DNA of 64,000 nucleotides from assembly GCA_002269645.1 (NCBI GenBank), contig NIVC01001974.1, positions 153,002-217,001 on the forward strand, in the 5' to 3' direction. Shown one piece after another: positions 4,273 to 63,218 of this stretch. The notes beneath the pieces are model-generated. The model made no database searches and was not told the DNA's origin. It saw only the letters and a list, made by a program, of their open reading frames with translations. How positions within the stretch are numbered: the stretch's first letter is position 1; each line of letters begins with the position of its first letter. The position numbers were made by a program, and so were the translations under genes. This DNA comes from Macrostomum lignano (taxonomy: Eukaryota).

Positions 4273-4336
<64 letters not shown>

Positions 4337-14260: not shown

Positions 14261-15142
14261 CCTGCGCACAGTATTGGCGCACTTGCATGTACTCAGGAGT
14301 CAGCTGAATGAGCAGAACTGCTTCAGAGCTGGGGTTCGGAATTATGTCGCCGAAGTAAAACCGACGCATACAAGTCGCTGAATTAATCATGTCTTCAATC
14401 TACGCTACTAGCTTTTTAAGCTGGTAAGATCCCACCAGTTGGGAAACTTAGCAGTTCCCGCATTGGCCCCGGTGAGCATGAGCACAGAGTTTCACATTTC
14501 CTGTCTTCTCCGCAGATCGCTGACGCATGCAGTCGCCGCGGTGGTCACCCCGGCAGTCACGCGCAACCCTGAAGTTCCCCTATACTTCAGCGGCTACTTG
14601 AAAGGCCGGGGGTGGTTTAAATAAAGAAAATTGTCAAACTCGAGGCGTCGTTGGAAAAAAGGCGAAAGCGTTCCGACGCCTTCGAAGTAAATCTAGAAAG
14701 GAAGGAAGACGAAGAAAAATTAAAAGAGGAGATCGGGCGGGTGAAATTGACCGCCCAGGCGGGGATCCTCTTGAGCTTGCATGGATTGCTCAATTTCCTT
14801 TCGTCATATTATAGAAAGTCGGTCTATCTTCTACTTTAGTTTGAGAGAGGAACTGCTCCTCCCTAGGCGAATAAAGCGTGAAAAATTGAGTAGAAATTTG
14901 GCACCTCTGGAGCAGCGGAAGCGGGGCTGAGATCTCATGCATGCGTAGAGCTGTCGGTCTGTTTACAGTGGGGTATCGAAATTCACAGCTCTACTGCTAT
15001 TGGCTGGCGGCTTGAGAGGCCAGAAAGCAGAATCTTTACAATTGTTTTTTATACTATATCAACCAATTGCCTACGATTTGTCTCAAAAATTGAACTCAAC
15101 TGAACACTTTCGGCTCCTAAAAATTGTCAACAACATTAACAG

Positions 15143-36369: not shown

Positions 36370-39300
36370 TCACACCATGGTTGTCTGGCCGTCCTTGCAG
36401 CGATTCCGACAGCCGCTAGAACCGCTGCTCGTTGCCGCGCTGTTGTCCGTCTTGAACCAGTAGTCGCAGTCCACGTAGCCCGGACAGTCGCTTGCTGTGC
36501 TGCTTGACATCAGCATCAGTAACGGTGGCGGAGGTGGAGGCGGAGGCGGCGGTGGTGGCAGCCGGAGGGAGTGCGTCATGGCTGCCTCTCCGCGGCCAGC
36601 AACTCTCCCATCGTCGTGTCCATCGTGGGAGTCTAGCTTGATGCCATCGTTGAAATCGTCGCTGCCAAGCTCTTCTTCGTAGTCATTGTTGTGGTCGTCG
36701 TCGACATCGTTTCGACCTCTTTGATGACGCCGATGTCGATGTCGCTGCTTCCGTCTGGCCGGAGCGGGCCGACGCTGCATTTGGCGTTGAATTCTGCGAC
36801 GTTCGAGACGCAGTCGACTGATGGCCAGACAGACACCGACGAGGGTCAGGCAGTTCAGTGTCAGCAGGCTGCTGCCGATCGTCAGGATCAGAACCAACCG
36901 ATTGTCCTCGTTGGCGACCAGCTCTGTCAAGGTCGGTCTGGTGGTTGACGCCTGACCGCCGTTGTCTGTTGGCTTCGGCGTCGACGATGGTCGTGGCGTC
37001 TGTCTTGTCGATTTGTCCGGCAGGGTGGCCATTGAATCAGGTGACAAGGATTGGCATCTCCGGCTGACGTTGGCATGGGCACCTTGGCTGCCAGTCTCGA
37101 TGAGTTTGTTTGCATTGTCCAGAATCGCTGGCAGATGTCGTTGCCACAGTCGCATCTGTTTGCTCCGATAGAAACTCTGTGCCGATGGTCGACCGCTTAT
37201 GCGGCCTGTTAAAACAAATTTAATCCATCTAAGTTTTTTTCAGTCTACGAGCTAACAGTCTACTAACAGTAGTTTAGCAGAATAAAAACGAAGACTTACC
37301 AAATGATAGATATTTCTGTGAATCTGGCAGAAAATTGGGCCATTCGACCGCTTGATCGTGCGGCAAAATTTGAGAGAATCCGTCAGCTGAGTAAGCTGTC
37401 CGATTACTCGATGGCTTGTTGGGATTTCTGCAAGAGATTAATGAGGATTAGCTTTACCTCCTACTGCCAAACACTGCTTAAGCCCAAACTTCGCTTTAAA
37501 ATAAATTAACGAATTTGAAATGGGTTTCTACATCATAAAATTGAATTCACCTCGTGGTTTAAACTTCATATCGGAAGTTTGTACCAAGAACGATTTATGT
37601 ATTGGTCCTTGGTTCGTACGCCTTTGATTGATGGGGGATTGGAAAACTTTTTCTTACCTCAAGACCAGATATAAAGAATCCAACTAATGGCTGCCAACCG
37701 GATGAGACAGGACAGGACAGGGAATAGAGAAGAGAGGAATGAGATGAGATATAGGATGAGAGAATAATGAAAGAGCTGAGAAGAGACGCAAAACCTTAAG
37801 CGGGCCGGATTGCTATTGTGAAGTTAAAAAGGCTGTTCTAGCAAAAATTCCAATTATGGTCATCATAATACATAAATAAAAATTGATTACACCTGCCTTA
37901 ATGGGCAGATGTGCAACCGACAGCTCAGCCGCAGCTATTGCGCGGCGCATCTGAAGGCTGCGTACGGCTGTTCAGTCCAAGGACTGGGGGGGGGGTTGCA
38001 CACACCCTCAATTACCCCAGCTAATGCTGGCACCCATTTTACAGCTGGGTGAACTGAAGCAATGCAGAGTTAATTGTCTTGCTCAAGAAATCAAATTGTT
38101 CCAATTGGAATCGGGAATCGAACCCCCGACCTTCAAGGCGTGAGGCCAACTCTCCAACCACTAGGCTACAACCCCCTGTAATTTATGTAATTTATTACCA
38201 TAAAATCGGTAAAATCGAGTTCTTAAATTAATTGCTCTCAGTAGCTATCGGTACCCCTACTGACATTAATCCCATCAATCTACTACATTCCCAGGTCAAT
38301 TACCCGGTAGCAACAAAATTAGCCAGGTAGCGCATCAGTGCAACGGAAGCGACTCGATCAGCAGCGCGGTAGCGTCCTATCGATTCAGCCCGTTCTGACG
38401 CCGGGTGCCGTCGGACGTCGGCCAGAACTGGTTCGCCTAAAGCCAACGCCAGGTCCTCCTGCCACCAGCCGCTACCGCCGTCTTCAGCAGCATCAAAGGT
38501 GCCCACAAAGGTAGCGGCACCTTTGGCAGTGTGGTGCAAAGCACTGGCCAGACACGGCGAAGCCAACAGGCCATCAGAGAGCATTGCGGCCTCTACAGAG
38601 TTCATTTTCGTGTCATTTGTAGCAATCGACTCGCGCGCTCCAACATCGTAAGCGGCATCGAGGACCCCGACTGCCACAGACTGGGCAGCGTTGCGCGGAA
38701 ACACAGTTTGCACCAGCCGTTCGATACTCAGTCTTCGATCCCTGGCGTCACCAGCTAGCTGGCTTTGTCCCATCAGGTGCCGAGCTGAGCTGGTCGAAAA
38801 TCCGACGAGAAGATTGACTCCGGCGAAGGCAGACCGAGACGACTTGATCTCCTGATTCAAATTGCTTGACTGAAAGAATTTTGCGTCGGTGCTGACTGGG
38901 CCAAGAGTCTTGGAGCCTTTGGGTGTCCCGACGTCGATTTCACTGCTGTCGTTTAGGACTCGACGCTCGGCTGCCAAAATGTCGGCGGCAGGCAGGCGAC
39001 GCGCAAAATTGATCAATTGGCTGGCCGACATCTTGTCCAGCTGCTGATCGGTGATTGAAGTTCGATTCCTGCTGGCCTCCTGAGCAGTTTTTGCTGCTTC
39101 TTTTAGTAGTTGCTTAGCAAAGACCCGAGCTTTGAGCGGGTCGGCCAGAGCCCATGGCGCTAATCCAGTGCCTCCGAGCAGGATCAGGTTCCGGACTCCC
39201 AGAAACGACTCTTGACCGTCCACTGTGGTGTGATTTTTTCGAGATTTTTGCGTTTCACTGACGCAAATCAAGGACGCAAGCAGTCATTCCTACTACGCTG

Positions 39301-42300
39301 ACCTCTGAGCACGGAGACTCTGACTCATCACACAGGGTGTCCCGATTTTCTCATCGTCAGGCGTGTTAACCCTAGCTCTGTGTCTTGAGGGTCGGCTCCG
39401 ATGGCCCAGAACTAAAAGCGACTAAGGTCCAAGGTCTATTTCAGTTTACGAGCCTCAAAATGAGTGAGCGCATGTCATCATCTCATTATCTCAGCATCTC
39501 AGCATCTTAGCATCACAGCATCTCCTCGTCTCAGCATCTCAGCATCTCAGCATCTCAGCATCTCAGCATCTCAGCATCTCAGCATCTCAGCATCTCAGCA
39601 TCTCAGCATCTCAGCATCTCAGCATCTCCTCGTCTCAGCATCTCAGCATCTCAGCATCTCAGCACCTAACCATCTCAGCATCTCAGCATCTCAGCAGGCA
39701 GGCATCTCAACATCTTTCCCTGTGAGCCATGGAATCTCAACATCTTCCCCTGTGAGCCATGGAATCTCAGCATCTTCCCCTGTGAGCCATGGAATCTCCT
39801 CGTCTCAGCATCTAAGCATCTCAGCATCTCAGCATCTCAGCATCTCAGCATCTCAGCATCTCAGCATCTCAGCATCTCAGCATCTCAGCATCTCAGCATC
39901 TCAGCATCTCAGCATCTCCTCGTCTCAGCATCTCAGCATCTCAGCACTTCAGCATCTCAGCATCTCAGCACCTAACCATCTCAGCATCTCAGCATCTCAG
40001 CAGGCAGGCATCTCAACATCTTTCCCTGTGAGCCATGGAATCTCAACATCTTCCCCTGTGAGCCATGGAATCTCAGCATCTTCCCCTGTGAGCCATGGAA
40101 TCTCCTCGTCTCAGCATCTAAGCATCTAAGCATCTCAGCATCTCAGCATCTCAGCATCTCAGCATCTCAGCATCTCAGCATCTCAGTATCTCAGCATCTC
40201 AGCATCTCAGCATCTCAGCATCTCAGCATCTCAGCATCTCAGCATCTCAGCATCTCCTCGTCTCAGCATCTCAGCATCTCAGCACTTCAGCATCTCAGCA
40301 TCTCAGCACCTAACCATCTCAGCATCTCAGCATCTCAGCAGGCAGGCATCTCAACATCTTTCCCTATGAGCCATGGAATCTCCTCGTCTCAGCATCTAAG
40401 CATCTCAGAATCTCAGAATCTCATCGTCTCAGCATCTCAGCATCTTATCGTCGCAGCATCTTAGCATCTCGCATCTCAGCATCTCAGTATCTCAGCATCT
40501 AAGCATCTCAGCATCTCAGCATCTCAGCATCTCAGTATCTCAGCATCTCAGCATCTCAGCATCTCAGCATCTCAGCATCTCAGCATCTCAGCATCTCAGC
40601 ATCTCAGCATCTCAGCATCTCAGCATCTCAGCATCTCAGCATCTCAGCATCTCAGCATCTCCTCGTCTCAGCATCTCAGCATCTCAGCATCTCAGAATCT
40701 CAGCATCTCAGCATCTCAGCAACTCCCCCAAAGCCAGGTAAACCTGTCAGACAACCTAACCGCTAAGCTTTCTGTACCTGAAAGATCCTATAAATACCAA
40801 CGCATTCGCATGGGTAACGTTATTTTCGCATGATCATTTTATAACCCTGATTTTCTAAAATCATTTTTAAACTACACACTTTGATACATGTACATTAAAA
40901 AACCTATGAAAATACCGGACTATTATTGAATAGTTGAACAACACGTCTTTTTGTATAATTAACAATACTGAGACCAATTAGTAATCAGATAGAAAGGAAG
41001 AAAAATCCAATATTAAAGAAGTCTTTAGCTACCGCTATTACTAATTCACTCAACCGTTAAATTCCTTTTGATTTTAAACTCTATCGGTTCTGAATTCGAG
41101 TTTGAACTACCTGTTCTCAAAATCGGCTTCTAATTATAGTTCACTCCAAGCTACGAGGTTCCAATAACATTCGAAATATAATTAGTTATCGTTATCAACA
41201 GAACTCGCCACTCACTGCGTGGGTCATAAACTACTTACTGAATGAGTAGCTGATGCGCATATTGCAGCAAAATAATTATTGGAAGGGAAATCTATTCGAT
41301 TTTTCAAACTTCCTGAAAAATCAACAATCTTAGCATCTCAGCATCTTCCCCTGTGAGCCATGGGATCTCAGCATCTCCCCTGTGAGCCATGGCATCTCAG
41401 CAACTCCCCATGTGAGCCATGGCATCTCAGCAACTCCCCCTGTGAGCCATGGCATCTCAGCAACTCCCCATGTGAGCCATGGCATCTCAGCAACTCCCCC
41501 TGTGAGCCATGGCATCTCAGCAACTCCCCCTGTGAGCCATGGCATCTCAGCAACTCCCCCTGTGAGCCATGGCATCTCAGCAACTCCCCCTATGAGCCAT
41601 GGCATCTCAGCATCTCCCCCTGTCAGCCATGGCATCTCAGCAACTCCCCCTATGAGCCATGGCATCTCAGCAACTCCCCCTGTGAGCCATGGCATCTCAG
41701 CAACTCCCCCTATGAGCCATGGCATCTCAGCAACTCCCCATGTGAGCCATGGCATCTCAGCAACTCCCCCTGTGAGCCATGGCATCTCAGCAACTCCCCC
41801 TGTGAGCCATGGCATCTCAGCAACTCCCCATGTGAGCCATGGCATCTCAGCAACTCCCCCTGTGAGTCATGGCATCTCAGCAACTCCCCATGTGAGCCAT
41901 GGCATCTCAGCAACTCCCCATGTGAGCCATGGCATCTCAGCAACTCCCCCTGTGAGCCATGGCATCTCAGCAACTCCCCATGTGAGCCATGGCATCTCAG
42001 CAACTCCCCCTGTGAGCCATGGCATCTCAGCAACTCCCCCTATGAGCCATGGCATCTCAGCAACTCCCCCTGTGAGCCATGGCATCTCAGCAACTCCCCC
42101 TATGAGCCATGGCATCTCAGCAACTCCCCATGTGAGCCATGGCATCTCAGCAACTCCCCCTGTGAGCCATGGCATCTCAGCAACTCCCCCTGTGAGCCAT
42201 GGCATCTCAGCAACTCCCCATGTGAGCCATGGCATCTCAGCAACTCCCCCTGTGAGTCATGGCATCTCAGCAACTCCCCATGTGAGCCATGGCATCTCAG

Positions 42301-45300
42301 CATCTCCCCCTGTGAGCCATGGCATCTCAGCATCTCCCCCTGTCAGCCATGGCATCTCAGCATCTCCCCCTGTCAGCCATGGCATCTCAGCAACTCCCCC
42401 TATGAGCCATGGCATCTCAGCAACACTTTCTTGAGCCATGAATTCACAGCTGAATGGCCATAAAATTAATATCTGTCATCTTAATTGGCAATTTACTCAC
42501 CCTGAGCGAATCGCGAGATCATGAGAAGCGACGCCAGCGCCGCCCCGTATCCGTGACCCATCAGCGTCACCCTGTCCGGGTCGCCGCCGAACTGCCTGAT
42601 GTTGGCCCTGACCCATTGCAACGCGTCGCGCAAGTCCATCAGAGCAAAATTTCCTGGCGCTTCCAGTCCGTCAGCCCATAGAAAACCTTTGGTTTAAACA
42701 TAGTTGTACTTTTATTCAAAGGAGAAGGCCTGATCGAAGAGAGTGTTCATGCCTGGTTCCCCTGGCAGCACCTCCTTCTAAAACTACCTGTACTAAACAC
42801 GTACCAAAACTGCCAAGTCGATAATTGAGGGTGATGCCGATAGCTCCGCTGACGGCGCAGAGCATGCTGAGATCGTAGGCGTTGCCAGAGCCCCACAGGT
42901 AACTGTCGCCGTGTACGAACACCAATACGGGCAGTAGCGGCTGCGGATGGTTAGTCCTTCGCCGCTGGTGAACTTCGAAACCATCGACTGAGTTTGAATG
43001 CGCTAAAAATATTGATTGAGAGCACCAGTAGATAAGGGTTAAAGGTCTGTCTGTCTGTCTGCCTGTCTCAGTGTCTCTCATAGTTTGTCTCAGTGTCTGT
43101 CTCAGTGTCTGTCTCAGTGTCTGTCTCAGTGTCTGTCTCAGTGTCTGTCTCAGTGTCTGTCTCAGTGTCTGTCTCAGTGTCTGTCTCAGTGTCTGTCTCA
43201 GTGTCTGTCTCAGTGTCTGTCTCAGTGTCTGTCTCAGTGTCTGTCTCAGTGTCTGTCTCAGTGTCTGTCTCAGTGTCTGTCTCAGTGTCTGTCTCAGTGT
43301 CTGTCTCAGTGTCTGTCTCAGTGTCTGTCTCAGTGTCTGTCTCAGTGTCTGTCTCAGTGTCTGTCTCAGTGTCTGTCTCAGTGTCTGTCTCAGTGTCTGT
43401 CTCAGTGTCTGTCACAGTGTCTGTCTCAGTGCCTGTGTCATTCCCTGTCCTGAAACGTTACTTCTTGACGGTCACAAAACGTGTGCTCAAATTATAATTT
43501 TCCTTTTTTAGTCCTTTTTCCAAGTAAAAAGTCAGTCTCATTTGATCTAGATTCTGTCTATCTATGCCTTTGACAATAATTCTTTTGATAATTATGTTTT
43601 CATTTTACAAGCGTAGCGTTAAGAGAATCACTCCTGCACCTTTAACCGAGTAGCTAGGGAGTAGACTTCAGAAAAGATTACGTGTAAAGAATTTCCTCGT
43701 CAACAAAGAGGACATAATCGTCCGGAACACCTTTTCAAAGCCTTAAACGCTTTATAGGGAAAAATATTAAAGAAACGTTACAGATTCAGACTTTTCAATG
43801 TGAAACGCGCAAAAACACCGCTTTTGAAAAGTTTTCTATGTTGAAAACATCTCTAAAAGCTGACTGACCGGCACTTGCTTTCTTGAGTCATAAACTCCTA
43901 AAGTCCTAAAACCAACCAACCAACCAACCAACCAACCAACCAACCAACCAACCAACCAACCAACCAACCAACCAACCAACCAACCAACCAACCAACCAAC
44001 CAACCAACCAACCAACCAACCAACCAACCAACCAACCAACCAACCAACCAACCAACCAACCAACCAACCAACCAACCAACCAACCAACCAACCAACCAAC
44101 CAACCAACCAACCAACCAACCAACCAACCAACCAACTAATCTTCAATACATACAGTTTATGCCCTATTGTTTTGACAAGTGGTTATGGATAGGAAATGAA
44201 TTTACTTTAAAAAATCTTCACTCCCATCCAAAATAGTATATTAATCTGAATCTTCCATAAAACGCGGCACCCTTTTGTCTCTATAAAGGTATTGATCCCT
44301 TTGCCCCAGGCCGCATTAAAAAGATCACGTGATAACCCTCGTATGTGAAAAGTTCTGGCCGACTGGCACAGACAGGGAGGCGAGACAGAGAGAGAGAGGG
44401 AGAGAGTGAGCGAATGAACAAGCACGACTTCTGCCTAATAACTCCAGACAATGGAGGCGGACCCACTTCATTAAGCATTGTTTCTTAATCTGTCATAATG
44501 ATTGAGCCAGCTCTAGCTCTTGTCCTGTTCATTGAAAACTTGCCGCCAATAAGGCTCAGCATCTAGTCGGCGACAATTCAGAATTTTCCAACTCATCTGT
44601 CGCCGTTCGTGCCGCCGTTCTGATCTGTGATCTGATTGATTGCGCGGATCACGCTATGCTTGCCTCAACTATGCAGGTGCAATAAGTGCAGGATTAAAAG
44701 TGAAACAATTTCGCACTTTACTTGCTTTTATTAATTGGACAAACGTAGATTGGGAATTGGAGTCCTGGAGGAGCCCTGTTTAAACTATTACAGATTGTAC
44801 ACATTCAGGTAGATCTCATCACTTAGCACCGGTTCGTACACATTCAGGTAGATCTCATCACTTAGCACCGGTTTGTACACATTCAGGTAGATCTCATCAC
44901 TTAGCACCGGTTTGTACACATTCAGGTAGATCTCATCACTTAGCACCGGTTTGTACACATTCAGGTAGATCTCAGAGTGACTCACCCAGCACCGGTTTGT
45001 ACACATTCAGGTACAAGCACTCCTCATCCTGCCGCTTCAGGTAAGGCAGCATTCGACTGACGTGAGCGGCGAATACTGACGTTGTTGAAGCTTGTAATTG
45101 CATGGAATCGTTGGGAAAATTTTGCGGACAAACAGCCTGAAACCTGTCCCGATAGAAGGTACTACCAGAGGCGTAGTAGTTGTACTTCATAGCGGCCACC
45201 GATCTGGCGAATCGATGCAGAGTGCGGCGCTCCATCTTGCCAACAGCAGCGAACTGCAGGCCCAGGTAGGCGCGAACTGTGGGCAGCTGAGGCGTGGTCG

Positions 45301-45505
45301 GCCTGATGTCGAGCCCCACCAACCTGCGATAGCCAGCTGCTGTGCCACCCTCGCGATAAGTCAAATAAGTGTTAGATCGATAAGCTCGACCGGTGCTGAA
45401 TTCTGGCACTGTCGATTGCATTGTAGTTTCCATGGCAACGGCATAGCAACCAAGTGAAATTATTAGCAGTAGTGACGGTAACTTGACTATTCGACAATTA
45501 TGCAT
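36370..45505 (-). CDS. NLGN: Neuroligin-like catalytically inactive cholinesterase-fold adhesion protein; exons 45505-44986, 43002-42805, 42686-42501, ~39258-38304 (5' edge uncertain), 37427-37300, 37205-36370
   Basis: Features are a signal peptide, [70 protein letters not shown] (nucleophile Ser replaced by Gly), NFVATGNPN, WPNF...[31 protein letters not shown] and a C-terminal PDZ ligand TTMV. Confidence 0.92.
37885..38177 (-). mobile_element. tRNA-derived SINE with CORE-like central domain, in a neuroligin intron
   Basis: The head GTAGCCTAGTGGTTGG carries the A box and GGTTCGATTCC the B box. The following CTTGAGCAAGACAATTAACTCTG...CTGTAAAATGGG resembles the MIR/CORE consensus CTTGGGCAAGTCACTTAACCTCTCTG...CTGTAAAATGGG. 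Confidence 0.8.
39475..40725. repeat. (CATCTCAG)n octamer repeat mixed with 30-bp gtgagccatgg units; ~300-bp higher-order duplication
   Basis: Direct reading. Confidence 0.93.
41331..42427. repeat. 30-bp minisatellite (catctcagcaactccccctgtgagccatgg)
   Basis: Period 30; two units per 60-nt line. Confidence 0.97.
43065..43430. repeat. 12-bp repeat (ctcagtgtctgt)
   Basis: Direct reading. Confidence 0.97.
43911..44136. repeat. (CAAC)n microsatellite
   Basis: Direct reading. Confidence 0.97.
44790..45010. repeat. 39-bp tandem copies of the 3' end of neuroligin exon 1
   Basis: The unit translates [13 protein letters not shown] on the minus strand, versus the exon [12 protein letters not shown]. 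Confidence 0.9.
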
Positions 45506-50327: not shown

Positions 50328-51065
50328 ATGAAGACGCAAATTTTAACTTTTTTAATCATCAAACAGCTGGTGTCAGTCTGGGCGCAGACGTGCCCTGATC
50401 CGTTTAGCCTGGAAGGTGACAAATGCCTGTTCGTGAGCACATCGAAGAAGCACACCTGGTGCTCGGCTTATCAGAAGTGCGCGTCAATCGGAGGTGAGCT
50501 CGTCAACTCGTTCGAGTCGATTCTGCTGCTAAGTGGCATGCCGATTCTTGACTGTTTCTGCATTGTGTGGCTCGGAGTGACCGACCTGGCCGATGAGAGA
50601 GGCTCCAGCAAGTCGGGCTGGCAACGCATTAACGGAAACGGCATCCTGCCTTTGAACGATACCATATGGAGCGATAATGATCCAAATTTCGGTGCGGTAG
50701 AGAACTGCATCACGCTTGTCTTTGGCAAAATCGCCAACCGAAAGTGCTCGGAGAAGTTCGGACTGGCGTGCGAGTGGACTCCGAGTCCGACAGTCGACCC
50801 GCTGCCACCACCAACTCATGCCAATTGGCAGCTGACGGAGTTCAAGCGCAGCATCTGCCATGAGAGCACGGAGTACTGCCACACTGACCTGCTGCAGGTG
50901 AAGAACTCAATGCACTGCGTTGCGGCCGGCATGCGTGCTGGCAACTGCAGACACGTGCTGTACAACAGCAAGCTGAGAACTTGCCGTCTTCTGCTGTTCA
51001 CCGACGCTCAGGTGGAGGAGGAGATCGAGACGAGCGCCGACTGGGTGAAGTTTTCTCTGCCCTGA
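50328..51065 (+). CDS. Secreted C-type lectin domain protein with a C-terminal PAN/Apple-like domain, intronless (245 aa)
   Basis: Features are a signal peptide, CP..F...GDKC, W..A...C...GGEL, VWLGV, WSDNDPN, ENC and C....GLACE, a PT/P linker, and a second Cys module (HC...C(RHVLY)NSKLRTCRLL). Confidence 0.88.
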   Translation: MKTQILTFLIIKQLVSVWAQTCPDPFSLEGDKCLFVSTSKKHTWCSAYQKCASIGGELVNSFESILLLSGMPILDCFCIVWLGVTDLADERGSSKSGWQRINGNGILPLNDTIWSDNDPNFGAVENCITLVFGKIANRKCSEKFGLACEWTPSPTVDPLPPPTHANWQLTEFKRSICHESTEYCHTDLLQVKNSMHCVAAGMRAGNCRHVLYNSKLRTCRLLLFTDAQVEEEIETSADWVKFSLP

Positions 51066-52665: not shown

Positions 52666-54010
52666 AGTCTACAAAGATGGTCTAGCAGAGGGACTTCGTT
52701 GCCGAACACCACACAAAGTTTGGTGTGGTGAGGACATGTGAAGCAAATGCAAGATCTCTACAGAGTGACACTAGTTCCTGTGAATGAGCTCCATGCATTC
52801 TTACTGCATACAACAATCAGTTCACCATTCAAACCTTAGTAAAGACCTTCAGAATCGACAAAAGTTTTTGTCAAGTTCAACTGACCAAAAAAAAATGGAA
52901 AGATTTGGACAACGCGAAACGCATTTATAGCATCGTCACTGCAGTCGAAGTGCAAGCTGCTGAAGGAAACTGTCAATAATAGCACAGCAGCGCATCTGAC
53001 AAGAAAGTTTTTAAACATCTAATATATTGTCTACTAGCTAATGACATATTGTGAGCATATACCAAAACATTTATGACATACTTGTAGGTATCATCATTTA
53101 TAATAAATAACTGGACCTATCCAAGATCATAAATTTCTTACGATTTAGTTAAAAATACTCACAAAATAAATACAAACACATTAACATTTGCTTTAGTTTA
53201 CTTACCCAATTCGCGTAGGAATCTATCAATCAAACACTAGTGCGAGTATAGACTGACTATATTGTTGTTTTATGCAACAAAGAGAAACAGCTCAAACATA
53301 AATGCTATACTCTACAGCACATCAATCTATTATCAATCTATTATATATATACTGTACCTTCTGCCAAATCGTCACTAAGCCTACAGGCCGTAGACTATTA
53401 GCTCGTGTTACTTGTATTTATCATACACGACTATAAAACTTGTGTTGCAGCCATCGAGCGTTTTTTCTATGGTTCAGCAGGCACTTAGCCCGGTCCATTC
53501 AACCACTTCGTTCCGTAACGGCCGGGTTAGCCATAGGGGGTGGGTGTGAGGGAATGGGGCAGGAGGTGTCAACGATTTCAAGCCCTCATTCATGCCTCCT
53601 GGTCTCCTCATGGTCTCCTCGGTAGGAGACGCGATTCAGGTCATTCCACGGTGACCTCACCCCCAAGCAACACATTGTAGAAAACATAACAAGTGTAAGC
53701 AGATCAGTAGTATATACGCAAATGCTAGATATTATTTTCTAACATATTTATTATTGTAGCCAACTCTAATTCAAAATAGTTTTACCATGAAACAAGAAAA
53801 ACTACTTTTTATGCAGTCAGGCTCCGAGATTTTAAGACAGACATGAACTGAAAAGAATTCACGCGTATGGAACTGCTGAGAGGGCCTGGCTCTTTACTAA
53901 TTCTGGATTTTCAGTTGGTGATGATAATGGATCTTCAGCTAGTTAATATTTGCTGCGCATACTAGTGCTAATCAGTATTTTCAAGTCGTCCGTCACACGG
54001 GCCAGCTTCA

Positions 54011-57000
54011 TCACCAGCGTCTCCCACGGGACGCAGAGCTCCGGAACGAGGCTCTGAACTCAGTAGACCTGGTGCCACCTGCGCCGGTGGCCCTCTCGGC
54101 CAGGTAGCTGTCATAATTGGCCGATATTTTGCCCAGTTCGGCGCGTAGATTCTCCTCGAAATGCGACATCGATTCGTTGTCGGTGTCTCGCCGGCCTGGG
54201 ATTAGCGGGATTGAATTTTTACTTCGGAGTCTTGTTCATGTGCAGAAGACTCTATACTCTATCTGACAATCTACCTTACACCAGGGTCTTTAGCAACAGG
54301 GGCTTTAGCACCAGGGGCTTTAGCACCAGGGCGCCAGCACCAGGGGCTTTAGCACCAGGGGCGCCAGCACCAGGGGCGCCAGCACCAGGGCGCCAGCACC
54401 AGGGGCTTTAGCACCAGGGGCTTTAGCACCAGGGGCGCCAGCACCAGGGGCTTTAGCACCAGGGGCGCCAGCACCAGGGGCGCCAGCACCAGGGGCGCCA
54501 GCACCAGGGCGCCAGCACCAGGGCGCGCCAGCACCAGGGGCGCCAGCACCAGGGGCGCCAGCACCAGGGGCGCCAGCACCAGGGGCGCCAGCACCAGGGG
54601 CGCCAGCACCAGGGGCGCCAGCACCAGGGGCGCCAGCACCAGGGGCGCCAGCACCAGGGGCGCCAGCACCAGGGGCGCCAGCACCAGGGGCGCCAGCACC
54701 AGGGGCGCCAGCACCAGGGGCGCCAGCACCAGGGGCGCCAGCACCAGGGGCGCCAGCACCAGGGGCGCCAGCACCAGGGGCGCCAGCACCAGGGGCGCCA
54801 GCACTTGGAATCATTGGGAGAACAATAGAAGCGTCTAATGCTACTAATGCAGTAGTCTATCAACCTAGATGTAAAATGCTTTATTAAATTTTTAACTTAC
54901 TACTAGCATATAGAGCGCTGTAAGTAGTGGTACCAACAGCTCCTCCAGAGCCAATCGAAGACAGATAGTCCTCGAACTGCTCGTACTGATGACGCTGCGT
55001 TGATTGCAGTGCCGGCCGGAAACTCACGGCCGACAGTTCGGGATGATAGCGCCGACTTCCAGCCAAGACAGACCCCGATAGCTGACGCCCTCGGGCGTTC
55101 CGATAACTGCAGTTGCTTTCCTTATTGAGTAGGAATATTTTATGACAGTTTCATTAAAAAAACACCAATTTTGTGGTGTGGCATTAAGACGGTTTTTCAA
55201 GCGTAGCTGTTTATTGGAATGACCAAAATATATACCTGAGGTCTCCTCGGTAGGAGACGTGATTCAGGTCATTTCACGGTGCCCTCACCCCACGGTGACC
55301 TCATCCCACGGTGACCTCACCCCACGGTGATCTCATCCCACGGTGACCTCAGCCCACGGTGATCTCAGCCCACGGTGCCCTCACCCCACGGTGCCCTCAC
55401 CCCACGGTGACCTCAGCCCACGGTGATCTCAGCCCACGGTGCCCTCATCCCACGGTGACCTCACCCCACGGTGACCTCATCCCACGGTGACCTCATTCCA
55501 CGGTGCCCTCACCCCACGGTGACCTCAGCCCACGGTGATCTCATCCCACGGTGACCTCACCCCACGGTGACCACGGTGTATAAAATTGTGAGCAGGACAG
55601 CTCAGCGCCGCTTCCCGAGAAGCGAAGTTGAGAGTTTAATAGACGGCTTACCAATTTTATTTTCTCCAATTCTTCAAGCTGATACCGGAGCCTTTTGGCC
55701 ACATCAATGGCTGCTTGGCAGACAAGACGGGCTGGCACCAGTCCCTTGTCCAGGGCCCGCTGTAGAATGGCTTCGCTGCATCTGTTCAGATCCAGGGCAT
55801 CGAATACTTGCTGACGCTCTGACTCGGGCGGCAACGGATCAGCTGGGGGATCACAGTATGTATTCAGAGATTAACAGCATAGGGATTATTGACGAATTCG
55901 AATAATCCTTGGAAACGTCTTTAGCAGTCAGTCATTCACAAACCAATCCTTTACAAACCAATCCTTCACAAACCAATCATTCACACACCAATCATTCACA
56001 AACCAATCCTTTACAAACCAATCCTTTACAAACCAATCCTTTACAAACCAATCCTTCACAAACCAATCCTTTACAAACCAATCCTTCACAAACCAATCCT
56101 TTACAAACCAATCCTTCACAAACCAATCCTTCACAAACCAATCATTCACAAACCAATCCTTTACAAACCAATCCTTCACAAACCAATCATTCACAAACCA
56201 ATCCTTTACAAACCAATCCTTCACAAACCAATCCTTCACAAACCAATCCTTCACAAACCAATCCTTCACAAACCAATCCTTCACAAACCAATCCTTCACA
56301 AACCAATCCTTCACAAACCAATCCTTCACAAACCAATCCTTCACAAACCAATCCTTCACAAACCAATCCTTCACAAACCAATCCTTCACAAACCAATCCT
56401 TCACAAACCAATCCTTCACAAACCAATCCTTCACAAACCAATCCTTCACAAGCAGACTGCCTCACCAGAGAGCAGAGCCTCGGCCGCCTCGTACAGAGTG
56501 TCGTGGCTGGTCCGATAGTCTGGCGACATGCTGGCTGCCAGTTTGACAAAGTCGGCCACAGGAAGCCCCCAGCCCGGGCCAGATCCAGCAGGTGACAGTC
56601 AATCACGCACGAGAGGACTTCGGGCACAACGCCGTCATTTTTCACAGTGTTCTCCACAATCTCGCACAGTACAGGGGCCGGCGTGTCTCTGAGTTCGTCC
56701 TGGGTGAAGCGGTGCAGCGCGCCGCCCGCAAGTTGCAGCAGTTTGGCGCGACACTCCGGGCTGGCCGTCTCGCTAACGCGAAGCGCTCGTCGAATCCAAT
56801 CGCATTGATCGACTCGGACAGCGGCGTGTCGGCTGGCAGGGCGAGAATCACCCTGTCGAGTACTTCGACGCCGGATTCTCTGGTTAACTGTTCACTGGAT
56901 TTTTCGTCGGCTTGTTTATCCACTCGGTCGTCGTGGTCCTCTTCCTGGTCTTTGTGATCATCTTTTTCCGCGTCGGCCTCGCGCTCCGGTGGCGTTGGCG

Positions 57001-57841
57001 CCTGCTGCGGCGGGTTCAGGTGCCGGCTGAATGCCTGATCCAGGTAGCGGGCGGCCAGCTCAGCCAGCGGTCGTCGACGCAGATGGGCGTTCGTTTCGGC
57101 TTTCAACTCGTCCTCTGTAGTAGCGGCAGCCGCGGCTGAAGACGATTCTGACGGGCAGACAGCTTGGATCAGTTGAAGGAATCGAGGCAACGGCAGGCTC
57201 AGCAGATGATTCTCAGTGTCGCGCTGCTGCTGCTGCTGCTGTCTGCTGGAGTACGGAGAAGAGAAGACGCGGTAGTGGTGATGGTGCCGGTAGAAGTGCT
57301 CGTCACTATCAGAGCTGAGCGCGGCAGCGGCAGCCGCCGAAGCCTCTGCCCGATGCCAGATGTCCAGCAGCGCGGCGAGACACCTCTCTGGGAGTTTCGT
57401 TTCGTCAGTTGGCCGACCGACGGAGCCGCAGCTGGTCAGCAGGTCGACAATGGGGCCGGCCGATTGGCCAACCTTGGCCGAATCAAGCAGCTCGCTGAGG
57501 TACCGGTCGGTCAGGTCGGCCAGGTTGCCTCGGCCGCGCATTGCCAGCCGTTCGGCCGCGCAGTGCAATTGGACGACATTGTCCGGCGAGATGTCGATTC
57601 GTTTGTTGTAGCAGAAATCGGCAATCAAGTTGAAGCAGTCGGCCCCGCCGGGAAAGTCCGATTCGAGTTCGAGCTCCGACACACTGGAATCGGCCAGGAG
57701 TTCGCGGAATCGGTCAGATTTGATGAAGAGCGGGAACCGGTGCAGCTTCCACTCAGATTTGACGCCGTCAGCGGCAAGTCGGACCGTGAGGTCGGACAGT
57801 TCGCCAGAGTCTCGGTAGCGGACAAGATCTTGGACTGGCAT
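54011..57841 (-). CDS. BTB/POZ + NPH3-domain protein (NPH3/RPT2-like architecture); exons 57841-56466 (two 1-nt frameshifts), 55842-55652, probable ~55105-54901 and 54195-54011
   Basis: The BTB region reads SDLTV..WKLHRFPLFIKSDRFRELL..FPGGADCFNLIADFCY..IDISPDNVVQLHCAAERLAM..GNLADLTDRYL. After restoring frame, the NPH3 region reads ASPECRAKL, ADFVKLAASMSPDYRTSHDTLYEAAEALL and ESERQQVFDALDLNRCSEAILQRALDKGLVPARLVCQ. It may be a pseudogene or contain assembly indels. Confidence 0.82.
54290..54803. repeat. 15-bp minisatellite (ggggcgccagcacca)
   Basis: Direct reading; shares the ggggcgccagc core with the 18-bp family. Confidence 0.95.
55285..55572. repeat. 16-bp repeat (cccacggtgacctcac)
   Basis: Period 16 (55321, 55337). 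Confidence 0.92.
55935..56450. repeat. 15-bp repeat (acaaaccaatccttc) in the BTB-NPH3 gene intron
   Basis: Direct reading. Confidence 0.95.
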
Positions 57842-62321: not shown

Positions 62322-63218
62322 ATGGTGTCTAAGCAGCACTTTGCCGCAGTCCTGACCAGTCTGGCAGCCCTCACACTGTTGGCGGCCCTGACCAGCGGCC
62401 AGTCAGGCAAGTCCGAATTGCCAGACTGTCCCAGCAACGAGTCAGTTTGCAACGCTGTGCTGCACTTCCCGGACAGAATAGTGGATCAGGGCCGCTACTG
62501 CAACGGCTGCGTGAACTGCGCCCTACCGTCAGCTGAGTCGGACATTCCGGCCACTCTCGCCGCGATGTCCGACCGCAGCTTCTACTGGCAGCACTGGGAG
62601 GACCCCAACATGCGAGTGCAGTTCGTCAAGTGCAGCCCGATGCCCAAGCGAGCCAGGTGCAGCCTCGCCGACCAGAAACCGGCGGCGGTCTTTGCCAGCC
62701 CGATGTCCACCTGGAGTCCCCGGCTGCTGCAGCACCGCTGCAACTGCCCGGACGCCCAGTTCCAGCTGAGGTCCTGGCGGCCGGCCGAGAACGGCGCCGA
62801 CTGGCGCTACGACTTCCACTGCCACCTGCCTGTCTGCTCGGTGGCAACCGCCGACAGTAAAGGAACCGCTGCAGCTGGCCTCGACTCGACGAGTCGCGAT
62901 GCCGACGATGACGTTTGCGTTGTGAAACGTCGTGCCAGCGAGAATTCGCCATCCAGCGTGGAGTTCAAGTGCACCTGTCCGCCCGAGTATCACTGCGTTG
63001 TCAAGGAGGTTCAAACGAAGAAGCCGGCTTCAGAGCATCAGGGACACGCCGGCGGAGGCGGCGGTGGCGTCGGCGGCGGAGGAGACGGCGGAAGAGGCGG
63101 CAGCGGAGACGAGTCGGAATGGAGGGCCGACCCAGCGGGCGGCGGCAGATCAGCCGGCGAAGATGCCAGAAGACGCACCATCAGAGCGGGGCGAACTCGA
63201 CCACCGGGCATTGAGTGA
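62322..63218 (+). CDS. Secreted cysteine-rich protein with three repeated C..C..CxC..C modules and a low-complexity tail (298 aa as read)
   Basis: Features are an ATG preceded by A at -3, the signal peptide HFAAVLTSLAALTLLAALTSG, 15 Cys in three modules (CPSNESVC..CNGC; CS..RCNCP..FHC; CS..VC..KCTCPPEYHC) and GC-rich coding composition. Confidence 0.85.
   Translation: MVSKQHFAAVLTSLAALTLLAALTSGQSGKSELPDCPSNESVCNAVLHFPDRIVDQGRYCNGCVNCALPSAESDIPATLAAMSDRSFYWQHWEDPNMRVQFVKCSPMPKRARCSLADQKPAAVFASPMSTWSPRLLQHRCNCPDAQFQLRSWRPAENGADWRYDFHCHLPVCSVATADSKGTAAAGLDSTSRDADDDVCVVKRRASENSPSSVEFKCTCPPEYHCVVKEVQTKKPASEHQGHAGGGGGGVGGGGDGGRGGSGDESEWRADPAGGGRSAGEDARRRTIRAGRTRPPGIE

What the first reader, a model, noticed from the sequence alone, without database searches (positions are those of the whole stretch)
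54011..57841. Plant-type NPH3/RPT2-like (BTB + NPH3 + coiled-coil) protein in an animal genome
Seen: the BTB carries NRL-family hallmarks (LHxFPL, FPGG, FCY, I.ISP.NV..L.CAAE.L.M, GNL...T..YL). Downstream segments parallel the NPH3 domain in order: SLPLPRFLQLIQAV, LAARYL, EVLDRVILALP, ASPECRAKL, FVKLA..M.PDYRTSHDTLYEA, ESERQQVF..LDL..CS and LVPARLVCQ. A probable coiled-coil last exon follows (FEENLRAELGKISANY). Established: NPH3/RPT2-like proteins are CUL3 substrate adaptors acting with phototropin and PIN polarity, and are usually described as a plant family. The gene has spliceosomal introns filled with the local repeats, so it is integrated rather than a contaminant. Inference: a little-studied animal branch, from ancient retention or horizontal transfer, with an unknown CUL3 substrate. 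I recall automated plant-like BTB annotations in some invertebrates but cannot verify them.
Basis: partly seen in the sequence, partly recalled or inferred. Interest (0 to 1): 0.85.

Follow-up and report, generated by a model that had tools for sequence, protein, structure and literature searches.

The report
Animal branch of plant NPH3 proteins
This flatworm gene encodes a BTB+NPH3 protein of a type that the literature calls plant-specific, and its relatives occur in sponges, an octocoral, an acorn worm, molluscs, annelids, ribbon worms, rotifers and parasitic flatworms, so the family is old and widespread in animals.

Summary
Window 54011-57841 (minus strand) holds a four-exon GT-AG gene of Macrostomum lignano encoding a 657-aa BTB + NPH3 protein. 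Pfam NPH3 scores 44.8 bits (cut-off 27) and BTB 25.3 bits (cut-off 20.5). After restoring two single-base deletions in exon 1, the product contains UniProt A0A1I8J8Q3 ("NPH3 domain-containing protein") exactly.

It is neither a contaminant nor a Macrostomum-specific transfer. Colinear BTB-NPH3 homologues sit on megabase-scale assemblies of molluscs, annelids, nemerteans, rotifers, neodermatan flatworms, a hemichordate, an octocoral and homoscleromorph sponges.

Profile-profile comparison of animal and plant sequences gives probability 100%, E = 5e-62, over 407 columns. In a bootstrapped NJ tree the streptophyte sequences, including Chara and Mesotaenium, form one clade (100%), and animals do not nest inside it.

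The NPH3 part is all-helical, with no BACK, Kelch or other solved fold neighbour. Animal proteins lack the plant RxSΦS tail. Spiralian proteins end in their own basic-aromatic motif.

Pipelines already attach plant-like names to these proteins. The papers I could search still call NPH3 plant-specific.

Function is inferred: a BTB-dimer scaffold, possibly a CUL3 adaptor. Origin is unresolved between ancient retention and ancient transfer.

The parts
56466..57841 (-). Exon 1. ATG at 57841-57839. Encodes residues 1-459 plus 1 nt: the BTB domain and most of the NPH3 domain. The donor is G|GTGAGG, phase 1.
   Evidence: ORF and three-frame translation. Splice contexts and phases. GC is 0.61, against 0.38-0.44 in the flanks. 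The exon boundary is conserved in L001 and L002 and in Haliotis, Ptychodera and Tubulanus.
57536..57817 (-). BTB/POZ domain (residues 9-102) with the NRL-type signature: LHRFPL, FPGG, FCY, N..QLHCAAERLAM.
   Evidence: Pfam PF00651 25.3 bits against cut-off 20.5. Foldseek matches BTB domains at TM 0.7-0.8. Alignment with plant and animal members.
56800..56801 (-). Frameshift 1. One base is missing relative to the annotated protein: AATGCG^ATTGG where GCGGAT is needed to read SINADWIRRAL.
   Evidence: Comparison of the three frames with P0001. Coordinates.
56564..56570 (-). Frameshift 2. One base is missing in or next to a G5 run: GCTGGGGGC^TTCC, needed to read ARAGGLPVADF.
55076..57457 (-). NPH3 domain in the wide sense: the all-helical region, residues 129-538, interrupted by introns 1 and 2. 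The Pfam-matched core is residues 411-482, at 56612-56466 plus 55842-55775.
   Evidence: Pfam PF03000 44.8 bits, profile positions 183-254 of 258. AF2 helices 129-538, mostly pLDDT >90. hhalign of the family against plants covers the whole domain.
55843..56465 (-). Intron 1 (phase 1), mostly a 15-bp minisatellite at 55935-56451, 34.5 copies.
   Evidence: TRF. GT..AG ends. Same position and phase in a mollusc, a nemertean and a hemichordate.
55652..55842 (-). Exon 2. Encodes the end of the NPH3 domain (ESERQQVFDALDLNRCS, LVPARLVCQ) and the start of the long helix 497-538.
   Evidence: Contained in P0001.
55121..55651 (-). Intron 2 (phase 0). It holds a 16-bp minisatellite at 55275-55572 and, at 55240-55259, a copy of a dispersed repeat that also lies downstream of the gene at 53612-53631.
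   Evidence: The donor TTG|GTAAGC is clear. The acceptor AATAAG|GAAAGC was chosen by phase and is inferred.
54901..55120 (-). Exon 3. Encodes a disordered Ser/Arg/Tyr-rich tail. Its boundaries are inferred.
   Evidence: Open frame, GC 0.555 and phase-consistent splice sites. Low pLDDT. Only weak similarity to paralogue tails.
54196..54900 (-). Intron 3 (phase 1), mostly a 15-bp minisatellite at 54292-54804, 34 copies.
54011..54195 (-). Exon 4. Encodes an acidic predicted helix (NESMSHFEENLRAELGKISANYDSYLAERA) and the conserved C-terminal motif ..FRASFRSSASRGRRW. Stop codon TGA at 54013-54011.
   Evidence: AF2 helix 607-633. Tail alignment with bivalve and gastropod proteins, and the terminal [RK]-[WYFIM] shared across spiralians. 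Stop codon.

Best explanation
The locus is a resident, spliced gene of the flatworm Macrostomum lignano. It encodes a member of a metazoan clade of the BTB-NPH3 (NRL) family.

SHOWN: The protein has an N-terminal BTB domain followed directly by an all-helical NPH3 domain that is colinear with the plant domain over its whole length. It also has disordered acidic inserts and a disordered tail ending in a conserved short motif.

SHOWN: The same architecture occurs in sponges, an octocoral, a hemichordate, molluscs, annelids, nemerteans, rotifers and parasitic flatworms. These sequences fall outside a 100%-supported streptophyte clade. The animal family therefore dates at least to the early metazoan radiation. 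It is not a recent plant-to-animal transfer and not a contaminant.

INFERRED from the plant family and from BTB proteins in general: the protein dimerises through its BTB domain. It may dock on CUL3 through the BTB domain and the helices that follow it. It would use the NPH3 solenoid and the tail motifs to bind partners or substrates, possibly at the cell cortex or on trafficking membranes.

Regulation must differ from plants. The phototropin and 14-3-3 switch motif RxSΦS is absent, and animals have no phototropins.

The two frameshifts in this window are most probably single-base assembly errors rather than real lesions.

Whether plants and animals share the gene by vertical descent with many losses, or through one very old inter-kingdom transfer, is not resolved.
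For: Identity of the gene:
- the corrected product contains UniProt A0A1I8J8Q3 exactly.
- Pfam NPH3 44.8 bits against 27, BTB 25.3 against 20.5. M. lignano paralogues and the two unidentified relatives P0006 and P0007 score 38-46 bits on NPH3.

Genomic residence:
- the neighbours are animal-type genes.
- minisatellites of the kind that fill the whole window also fill the introns, and one dispersed repeat has a copy both inside and outside the gene.
- paralogues lie on 721-kb and 883-kb M. lignano contigs.

Distribution:
- a flatworm-only profile finds 1118 representative proteins at E <= 1e-3 and 93 at E <= 1e-30.
- named hits come from Tubulanus, Lineus, Owenia, Capitella, Haliotis, many bivalves and gastropods, Octopus, Adineta, Rotaria, Paragonimus, Opisthorchis, Hymenolepis, Cichlidogyrus, Ptychodera, Xenia, Corticium and Oscarella. 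Most lie on contigs of 1-200 Mb.
- bilaterian members score 41-71 bits on Pfam NPH3; Octopus is borderline at 27.4.

Homology with plants:
- non-plant against plant profile, probability 100%, E = 5e-62, 407 columns.
- sponge clade against plants, E = 1.7e-45.
- cnidarian clade against plants, E = 1.6e-37.

Phylogeny:
- NJ tree with 100 bootstraps. The plant clade has 100% support, with Chara and Mesotaenium at its base (identified). Animal groups follow phyla: sponges 99, molluscs 84-100, flatworms 78, rotifers 100, nemerteans 100.

Gene structure:
- intron 1 has the same phase, and the same position to within one codon, in the flatworm, a mollusc, a nemertean and a hemichordate.

Structure:
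- mean pLDDT 81.5, pTM 0.74.
- BTB matches, including KEAP1 BTB with its following helices and the A55 BTB-BACK chain from its Cul3 complex, over about 150 columns.
- no fold neighbour for the NPH3 part.

Tails:
- plants end in RRHSIS-type tails; spiralians end in [RK]-[WYFIM].
Against: No expression, localisation or interaction data were available, so every functional statement is by analogy.

CUL3 binding was not tested. The hydrophobic-x-acidic motif I see before the FPGG strand (V54-S-E56 in the window protein; M-x-D in many animal members) is a resemblance recalled from BTB-Kelch literature. It is not a test.

The window copy as it stands cannot be translated through exon 1, so it could be a dead allele or homeologue.

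The boundaries of exons 3 and 4 are model-based.

The tree is distance-based, with Kimura distances on 443 columns. Its backbone is unresolved. Sampling was limited to the 150 best representatives plus 120 named hits.

Sponge and octocoral members fall below Pfam's NPH3 cut-off (22.6 and 23.4 bits), and Oscarella gives no Pfam NPH3 hit at all. Their membership rests on profile-profile comparison.
Confidence: 0.8

Rival explanations
1. Ancient vertical inheritance. A BTB-NPH3 gene existed before the lineages leading to plants and animals split. It survives only in streptophytes and in part of Metazoa, and was lost from vertebrates, ecdysozoans, fungi and most protists.
For: Plants and animals are reciprocally non-nested; the plant clade has 100% bootstrap support. 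When rooted by the animal sequences, the streptophyte algae Chara and Mesotaenium sit at the base of the plant clade, as the species tree predicts. Divergence is deep, about 24% identity over 407 columns. The family is present in sponges, Cnidaria and Bilateria. A plant intron lies 1-4 nt from the conserved animal intron 1.
Against: No named hit from any third eukaryotic lineage appeared among the best 150 representatives or the 120 listed named hits, although the collection includes EukProt protists. This scenario would require many independent losses. The near-coincident intron differs in phase, 0 in plants against 1 in animals, so its homology is unproven.
Confidence: 0.4
2. One very old inter-kingdom transfer, in either direction, between a stem or early streptophyte alga and a stem metazoan, followed by vertical descent and losses in both kingdoms.
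For: The distribution is disjunct: streptophytes plus animals only among named hits. The sponge and octocoral genes are intronless. One transfer is more parsimonious than many losses.
Against: Neither kingdom nests inside the other, so the donor would have to be an unsampled stem lineage. Bilaterian genes share an old intron. No composition or synteny signal of transfer can be expected after so long.
Confidence: 0.4
3. The copy in this window is a pseudogene: a decaying duplicate in the partly duplicated M. lignano genome, disabled by two frameshifts.
For: Two single-base deletions interrupt exon 1. M. lignano holds several near-identical copies of the paralogue, P0002, P0003, P0005 and P0008. 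No NCBI protein model matched this locus; the only match was the partial UniProt model.
Against: Apart from the two missing bases, the 371 residues that can be compared are 100% identical to the annotated protein. There are no stop codons or other lesions. Both sites sit at short G/C runs, where long-read assemblies typically drop bases. Splice sites and the conserved C-terminal motif are intact.
Confidence: 0.15
4. Contamination by plant or algal DNA, or a recent Macrostomum-specific transfer from a plant.
For: The domain is described as plant-specific (PMC11313873, PMC1257465, PMC4327156).
Against: The gene is embedded between animal genes in one 64-kb window and shares a repeat with its surroundings. 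Orthologues lie on chromosome-scale scaffolds of many animal phyla. The sequence groups with other flatworms, not with plants. Identity to plant proteins is only about 20-23%.
Confidence: 0.01
5. It is an ordinary animal BTB-BACK(-Kelch)-type adaptor, and the NPH3 hit is a spurious match between helical regions.
For: The first helices after the BTB domain superpose on KEAP1 and A55 BTB-plus-following-helices chains.
Against: There is no Pfam BACK or Kelch hit at E <= 1. PDB sequence matches end at about profile position 133. The NPH3-only model has no significant PDB neighbour. Homology with plant NRLs is colinear across about 400 columns at E = 5e-62.
Confidence: 0.01

Closest known systems
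Plant NPH3/RPT2-like (NRL) proteins: NPH3, RPT2, NCH1, the NPY/MAB4 group, NRL5, DOT3, At5g48800, At1g30440
   Same: The two-domain plan is the same: an NRL-type BTB domain followed directly by the NPH3 helical domain, colinear over about 400 columns. Shared signatures include LHKFPL, FPGG, FCY, RCAAE.L.M, D.YL.E.A, R..(H/D)D.LY and (D/N)..+LS.E. A long helix follows the domain. The C-terminal tail is disordered.
   Different: The animal proteins form a separate clade outside all sampled streptophyte sequences. They lack the N-terminal extension that precedes the BTB domain in plants. They lack the plant insertion LLIPSF..GDTL(F/Y)DVD, and they carry acidic low-complexity inserts of their own. 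They have no C-terminal RxSΦS motif, which is the phototropin phosphorylation and 14-3-3 site described in PMC10953443. Spiralians instead end in [RK]-[WYFIM]. Animals have no phototropins and no PIN auxin carriers (established knowledge), so the partners must differ.
Animal BTB-BACK-Kelch and related CUL3 adaptors (KLHL family, KEAP1, KBTBD; poxvirus A55)
   Same: Both have an N-terminal BTB domain followed by helices. The BTB domain superposes at TM 0.7-0.8, and the first following helices align with KEAP1 and A55 chains. This is the basis for the CUL3-adaptor inference.
   Different: There is no BACK or Kelch domain by Pfam, by PDB sequence search or by fold search. The substrate-binding end is an alpha-solenoid plus a disordered tail, not a beta-propeller.
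UniProt A0A1I8J8Q3 (M. lignano 'NPH3 domain-containing protein') and the automatic NCBI names in other animals
   Same: A0A1I8J8Q3 is this very gene: residues 152-522 of my model are identical to it. Annotation pipelines have already attached NPH3, RPT2, DOT3 and At5g48800-like names to orthologues.
   Different: The database model is partial. It has no BTB domain, runs into intron 2 and lacks exons 3-4. None of the papers I could search discusses these animal proteins.

Membership tests
BTB-NPH3 (NRL) family | N-terminal BTB/POZ domain with NRL-type sequence signature | tested here: met
   Pfam PF00651 25.3 bits against cut-off 20.5. LHRFPL, FPGG, FCY, N88 and CAAE.L.M align with plant NRLs. 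Fold match to BTB domains at TM 0.7-0.8.
BTB-NPH3 (NRL) family | NPH3 domain (Pfam PF03000) above the curated threshold | tested here: met
   44.8 bits, E = 1.6e-11, cut-off 27, profile positions 183-254 of 258. The uncorrected model scored 39.4 bits.
BTB-NPH3 (NRL) family | Colinear homology with plant proteins across the whole NPH3 domain, not only its C-terminal motif | tested here: met
   hhalign of the non-plant profile against the plant profile: probability 100%, E = 5e-62, 407 columns, from the BTB domain to the end of NPH3. Some orthologues match Pfam positions 4-256. The window protein itself was not in the hhalign profile, but it aligns with those sequences throughout.
BTB-NPH3 (NRL) family | C-terminal coiled coil (present in NPH3, RPT2 and others) | tested here: inconclusive
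   AF2 predicts a 42-residue helix (497-538) directly after the domain and a second helix at 607-633. No coiled-coil predictor or oligomer model was run.
BTB-NPH3 (NRL) family | C-terminal RxSΦS phototropin-phosphorylation and 14-3-3 motif (many plant NRLs; PMC10953443) | tested here: not met
   The window protein ends ..SASRGRRW. Plant sequences in the same alignment end RRHSIS, RRYSVS or RRHSLS. This motif is not universal in plants, so it defines a subset rather than the family.
BTB-NPH3 (NRL) family | Placement inside the plant NRL radiation (one of the named plant subfamilies) | tested here: not met
   The plant clade, including Chara and Mesotaenium, has 100% bootstrap support and excludes all animal sequences. 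The gene belongs to the wider family as a separate metazoan clade, not to any plant subfamily.
BTB-NPH3 (NRL) family | CUL3 binding, plasma-membrane association, interaction with AGC kinases, GTPase activity (reported for plant members) | not testable with these tools
   These are biochemical properties. The only indirect cue is that the BTB domain and its following helices resemble Cul3-binding BTB chains. The NPH3 model is all-alpha and is not a Ras-like G-domain fold.
BTB-BACK-Kelch adaptors | BACK domain and Kelch beta-propeller after the BTB domain | tested here: not met
   No BACK or Kelch family in Pfam scans at E <= 1. PDB sequence hits cover only profile positions 3-133. The model has no beta structure after residue 59. 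The NPH3-only fold search found nothing significant.

The most novel reading that the evidence does not exclude
BTB-NPH3 is not a plant invention. It is an ancient eukaryotic module that predates the plant-animal split, or was exchanged between the two lineages more than 600 million years ago. Its ancestral job would then be independent of phototropin and auxin, for example cortical polarity or vesicle-trafficking scaffolding coupled to CUL3. On this reading, the animal clade is a class of BTB adaptor absent from all standard animal models and from vertebrates, but present in sponges, corals, molluscs and parasitic flukes and tapeworms. It has its own conserved C-terminal ligand motif, and it offers the first non-plant system for testing what the NPH3 domain does biochemically.
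Probability: 0.35. Interest if true: 0.8.

Novelty: new variant of a known kind. Interest (0 to 1): 0.68.

Why it matters
Papers up to 2024 state that the NPH3 domain is plant-specific:
[quoted passage not shown] A metazoan clade reaching from sponges to a hemichordate overturns that statement. It has four practical consequences.

1. It supplies a natural outgroup to root and polarise the plant NRL tree.
2. It separates the core function of the domain from phototropin and PIN biology.
3. It adds an unstudied class of putative CUL3 adaptors to animals.
4. Macrostomum lignano is a laboratory flatworm in which RNAi, in situ hybridisation and transgenesis are established (my own knowledge), so function could be tested directly.

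The family is present in flukes, tapeworms and monogeneans and was not seen in vertebrates. That may interest parasitologists.

The novelty is limited in one respect: annotation pipelines had already labelled these proteins.

Tried and rejected
1. My first frame-corrected model joined the frames at the wrong spot (about 56780). Comparison with P0001 placed the real sites at 56800/56801 and 56564-56570.

2. The first two word-indexed homologue searches, one with a single protein and one with full-length alignment A2, returned only 8 hits each. I suspect, but did not test, that low-complexity linkers dominated the word index. Trimming the alignment to conserved columns (A3) fixed this.

3. The Logan runs ERR14224705 and DRR639838, which hold the closest non-lignano relatives P0006 and P0007, could not be assigned to an organism. 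The same is true of the metagenome contigs that carry the intronless relative P0245.

4. The literature searches found no paper describing animal NPH3 proteins. The terms were NPH3 with Macrostomum, metazoa, mollusc, or animals plus HGT; PF03000; and the automatic gene names. One sea-urchin paper only lists PF03000 in a generic domain list. Only open-access text was searched.

5. Foldseek with the full model found only BTB matches. With the NPH3-only model it found only weak matches to generic helical repeats. This gave no functional lead and no support for a canonical GTPase fold.

6. phmmer of the window BTB region against PDB sequences found only BTB-zinc-finger chains, so it gave no direct alignment to a Cul3-bound adaptor.

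7. I considered the near-coincident plant and animal intron as proof of shared ancestry. I rejected it as proof because the phases differ.

8. I guessed from the sequence that the ORF at 50328-51065 was a C-type lectin. Pfam did not support this.


Full report
WHAT IS THERE

The finding's coordinates are exact. On the minus strand an ATG at 57841 opens a GC-rich reading frame, and a TGA at 54013-54011 closes the last exon. I built a four-exon model: 57841-56466, 55842-55652, 55120-54901 and 54195-54011. All introns are GT..AG and the phases agree: 1, 0, 1. Exons have GC of 0.54-0.61, against 0.38-0.44 in the flanks.

Each intron is mostly one minisatellite array, with units of 15, 16 and 15 bp. 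Arrays of this kind fill the whole window (45 TRF rows). A 20-bp piece of a dispersed repeat occurs both in intron 2 (55240) and 380 bp beyond the stop codon (53612).

THE TWO FRAMESHIFTS

Exon 1 changes frame twice. The closest database protein is P0001, which is UniProt A0A1I8J8Q3, 'NPH3 domain-containing protein' of Macrostomum lignano. It reads straight through both places. Compared with it, the window lacks one base at GCG^ATT (56800/56801) and one base in or next to a G5 run (56564-56570).

With those two bases restored, residues 152-522 of my 657-aa model are identical to P0001. There is no other lesion. I therefore read the frameshifts as dropped bases in the assembly. A very young dead copy cannot be excluded (about 15%).

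P0001 itself is a partial model. It has no BTB domain, its last two residues are read from intron 2, and it lacks exons 3-4.

DOMAIN TESTS

- Pfam gives NPH3 (PF03000) at E = 1.6e-11 and 44.8 bits, with a curated cut-off of 27, for residues 411-482. It gives BTB (PF00651) at 25.3 bits, with a cut-off of 20.5, for residues 9-102. No BACK or Kelch hit appears even at E <= 1.
- The M. lignano paralogues P0002 and P0004 and the unidentified relatives P0006 and P0007 also pass the NPH3 threshold, at 38-46 bits.

THE HOST IS AN ANIMAL AND THE GENE IS RESIDENT

- The best hits are M. lignano proteins (taxonomy).
- The window also carries a phosphoglycerate-mutase-type gene, a rhodopsin-family GPCR, a carboxylesterase-family gene and a transposase-like HTH fragment.
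- Paralogues lie on 721-kb and 883-kb M. lignano contigs.

THE FAMILY IS WIDESPREAD IN ANIMALS

A profile of five flatworm-type sequences, searched against 1.84 billion cluster representatives, found 1118 proteins at E <= 1e-3 and 93 at E <= 1e-30.

The top 60 or so begin at residue 1 with the BTB domain, as the flatworm protein does. Lower hits start 30-120 residues in, as plant NRLs do.

Exact look-ups and a further search with a trimmed non-plant alignment named the owners (taxonomy):

- Nemerteans: Tubulanus, Lineus
- Annelids: Owenia, Capitella
- Molluscs: Haliotis, Physella, Lymnaea, Batillaria, Candidula, Plakobranchus, Octopus, and the bivalves Saccostrea, Mercenaria, Mactra, Argopecten, Ruditapes, Mya, Mytilus, Dreissena, Sinanodonta and Pinctada
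- Bdelloid rotifers: Adineta, Rotaria
- Parasitic flatworms: Paragonimus, Opisthorchis, Hymenolepis, Cichlidogyrus
- A hemichordate: Ptychodera flava
- An octocoral: Xenia
- Homoscleromorph sponges: Corticium, Oscarella

Most lie on contigs of 1-200 Mb.

Pipelines have already given several of them plant-derived names: 'At5g48800-like', 'At1g30440-like', 'phototropism 2-like', 'root phototropism protein 2', 'DOT3-like'.

No arthropod, nematode, vertebrate, fungal or protist name appeared in the listed hits. The lists were capped, so this is not an exhaustive absence.

HOW GOOD IS THE HOMOLOGY WITH PLANTS?

- Bilaterian members score 41-71 bits on Pfam's plant-trained NPH3 model, some over nearly its full length. 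Octopus is borderline at 27.4.
- Xenia (23.4 bits) and Corticium (22.6 bits) fall just below the cut-off, and Oscarella gives no Pfam NPH3 hit at E <= 0.01.
- Profile-profile comparison settles the question. Non-plant against plant gives probability 100%, E = 5e-62, over 407 columns. These run from the start of the BTB domain to the helix after the NPH3 domain.
- The sponge clade against plants gives E = 1.7e-45 over 454 columns. The cnidarian clade against plants gives E = 1.6e-37 over 408 columns.

Motifs shared across kingdoms include LHKFPL, FPGG, FCY, RCAAE.L.M, D.YL.E.A, R..(H/D)D.LY and (D/N)..+LS.E.

Compared with plants, the animal proteins lack the N-terminal extension before the BTB domain. 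They also lack the insertion LLIPSF..GDTL(F/Y)DVD, and they carry acidic low-complexity inserts elsewhere.

PHYLOGENY

I built an NJ tree of 107 sequences on 443 well-occupied columns, with 100 bootstraps.

- All plant sequences form one clade at 100%.
- The two Chara proteins and the Mesotaenium protein (identified) form the group at its base. The species tree predicts this if the animal sequences act as the outgroup.
- Animal sequences group by phylum: sponges 99, molluscs 84-100, flatworms 78, rotifers 100, nemerteans 100, and the Xenia-type group 100.
- The window protein sits with its M. lignano paralogues (88) inside the flatworm group.
- The backbone among animal groups is unresolved.

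Animals do not nest in any plant subfamily, and plants do not nest in any animal group. This rules out contamination and any recent plant-to-flatworm transfer. Two readings remain:

- Descent from a gene older than the plant-animal split, with many losses.
- One very old transfer between stem lineages.

I cannot separate them and give each about 0.4. Caveats: the tree is distance-based, taxon sampling is truncated, and there is no outgroup.

GENE STRUCTURE ACROSS TAXA

I mapped exons exactly for five loci.

- Intron 1 of the window gene lies after ..EAAEALLS, phase 1. Haliotis, Ptychodera and Tubulanus have an intron at the same place and in the same phase, one codon further along in the alignment.
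- The two unidentified relatives L001 and L002 lose similarity at the same residue.
- Brachypodium and Sphagnum have a phase-0 intron at ..ID(V/I)YLK|AH. This is 1 nt from the window's intron and 4 nt from that of the other animals.

This near-coincidence is suggestive. By my rough estimate, a plant intron landing within one codon of the animal site would happen by chance about 2-3% of the time. The phase differs, however, so I do not count it as proof of a shared intron.

The Corticium and Xenia genes are intronless.

STRUCTURE

AlphaFold2 on an 85-sequence alignment gave mean pLDDT 81.5 and pTM 0.74. The model shows:

- a BTB domain at residues 1-125;
- an all-helical domain at 129-538, mostly above pLDDT 90;
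- disordered inserts at about 178-195 and 276-317;
- a 42-residue helix at 497-538;
- a low-confidence tail with helices at 566-579 and 607-633.

Foldseek against the PDB matched only the BTB domain, at TM 0.7-0.8 to BCL6, ZBTB8A and KLHL26. The KEAP1 BTB chain and the poxvirus A55 BTB-BACK chain from its Cul3 complex extended over about 150 columns.

A separate model of the NPH3 part alone (P0001, pLDDT 86) had no significant neighbour. The best E was 4.7e-3, all TM scores were below 0.35, and the hits were only designed or generic helical repeats. A profile search of PDB sequences also matched only profile positions 3-133.

The domain is therefore a helical solenoid with no solved relative. 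It is not BACK, not Kelch, and not a Ras-like G domain.

TAILS

Plant sequences in my alignment end in RRHSIS, RRYSVS or RRHSLS. This is the RxSΦS site that phototropins phosphorylate and that binds 14-3-3 proteins (PMC10953443).

The window protein ends ..EFRASFRSSASRGRRW. Other spiralian proteins end as follows:
- M. lignano paralogues: SRKW, SRRW
- the nemertean Tubulanus: TKW (Lineus ends AQK)
- the annelid Owenia: PRY
- molluscs: ..Y.HR(Y/F/I/M)

The window's last exon also aligns with bivalve tails. An acidic stretch (S.FEEN.. against S(Y/L)(D/E)(D/E)(D/E)L) comes first. It is followed by (S/T)FR(S/A)S.. and the terminal basic-aromatic pair.

This supports exon 4. It also points to a conserved C-terminal ligand or localisation motif that differs from the plant switch.

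The Xenia-type group instead carries a conserved extension of about 120 residues ending ..YWPF...

MECHANISM

Shown: the architecture, the homology and the conservation.

Inferred:
- BTB-mediated dimerisation.
- Possible docking on CUL3. NPH3 is reported as a CUL3 adaptor in Arabidopsis; this is my own knowledge of the literature, and PMC11313873 leaves the possibility open for NRL5.
- Partner binding by the solenoid and the tail motifs. In plants these proteins sit at the cell cortex and are linked to polarity and trafficking (PMC11313873; bioRxiv 10.64898/2026.08.17.745269).

A hydrophobic-x-acidic triplet before the FPGG strand resembles the Cul3-contact motif of BTB-Kelch proteins. It reads VSE in the window protein and M.D in many animal members. 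That resemblance is recalled from memory and was not tested.

Animals have no phototropins and no PIN carriers, and the RxSΦS site is absent. The upstream regulation and the substrates must therefore differ.

NOVELTY

The family and its domains are known, and this very protein carries an automatic 'NPH3 domain-containing' label. The papers I could search call the domain plant-specific (PMC1257465, PMC4327156, PMC11313873), and none mentions animal members.

I rate it a new variant of a known kind: a metazoan clade with its own tail motif and gene structure. Interest is moderately high.

Noticed in passing
window 1-64000: Tandem arrays with units of 4-50 bp recur across the whole window (45 TRF rows of score >= 200, some describing the same array at different periods). 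They also produce long spurious ORFs on both strands. This fits the repeat-rich M. lignano genome as I know it.
   Followed up: partly
window 3591-5159 (+): A phosphoglycerate-mutase-type gene (Pfam His_Phos_1, 87.7 bits) split into at least three exons. One intron is filled by a (GACA)n array at 4273-4567.
   Followed up: partly
window 15124-17830 (+): A rhodopsin-family GPCR (Pfam 7tm_1, 91.7 bits). The first ~190 residues of its ORF, as listed, run through a 12-bp tandem array at 15162-15659. The true start codon may lie further downstream.
   Followed up: partly
window 36370-45505 (-): A carboxylesterase-family gene in several exons (Pfam COesterase hits at 44972-45505 and 38300-39271). 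The ORF at 36370-37155 looks like a transmembrane segment plus a proline-rich tail, which suggests a neuroligin-like protein. Only the two COesterase exons were tested.
   Followed up: partly
window 9968-10480 (+): An ORF with weak helix-turn-helix matches (HTH_38, HTH_23) of the kind found in transposases. It is probably a transposon remnant.
   Followed up: no
window 50328-51065 (+) and 62322-63218 (+): Two cysteine-rich ORFs with signal-peptide-like starts and no Pfam match at E <= 0.001. I guessed that the first was a C-type lectin, but Pfam did not support this.
   Followed up: partly
window 53612-53631 and 55240-55259: Two exact copies of a 20-bp segment (GGTCTCCTCGGTAGGAGACG). At 55240 it lies next to the 16-bp 'CACGGTGACCTCACCC' array in intron 2. 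The 53612 copy lies downstream of the gene, followed by a single ACGGTGACCTCACCCC unit. This looks like a dispersed repeat family that seeds minisatellites.
   Followed up: partly
window 54011-54060; proteins P0184-P0200 and others: Spiralian BTB-NPH3 proteins share an extreme C-terminal motif, (S/T)FR(S/A)S..(H/R)R(W/Y/F/I/M)-COOH, preceded by an acidic stretch that AF2 predicts as a helix in the window protein. Its reader is unknown. It takes the place of the plant RxSΦS tail.
   Followed up: partly
L006 and L007 (plants) against the window, L008, L009 and L012 (animals): A plant intron (phase 0, after ..ID(V/I)YLK) lies 1-4 nt from the conserved animal intron 1 (phase 1). This is either a relic of a shared ancestral intron that slid, or coincidence.
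   Followed up: partly
L010 (Corticium) and L011 (Xenia): The sponge and octocoral BTB-NPH3 genes are intronless, unlike the bilaterian and plant genes. Corticium and Oscarella also carry several paralogues (the clusters of P0101, P0120, P0137 and P0236).
   Followed up: partly
alignment A8 (P0243, P0027, P0201, P0227, P0234, P0235, P0209, P0237): The Xenia-type group has a highly conserved extra C-terminal region of about 120 residues (..GQWE.NDVTLNVTPKD....LFDPFNEQLIEITRSKHDNLMVGEHY..YWPF..). It is absent from other clades and may be an added domain.
   Followed up: no
L003-L005 (metagenome contigs, P0245); P0043 and P0057 groups: Intronless BTB-NPH3-like genes of 445-741 aa sit on short contigs from JGI, ENA and NCBI records, at least some of them metagenome samples. 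They are only 28-35% identical to named animal proteins. The organism is unknown and could be an unsampled animal group or a protist.
   Followed up: partly
P0239 (Rotaria sordida): This rotifer protein model carries a TIL (trypsin-inhibitor-like cysteine-rich) domain after the BTB-NPH3 part (Pfam 53.3 bits). It may be a gene-model fusion.
   Followed up: no
P0033 (Paragonimus), P0031, P0041, P0044: Neodermatan (fluke, tapeworm, monogenean) members are very divergent. The one scanned, Paragonimus P0033, gives no Pfam NPH3 hit. All four still cluster with Macrostomum in the flatworm clade (78% bootstrap). The family was not seen in vertebrates.
   Followed up: partly
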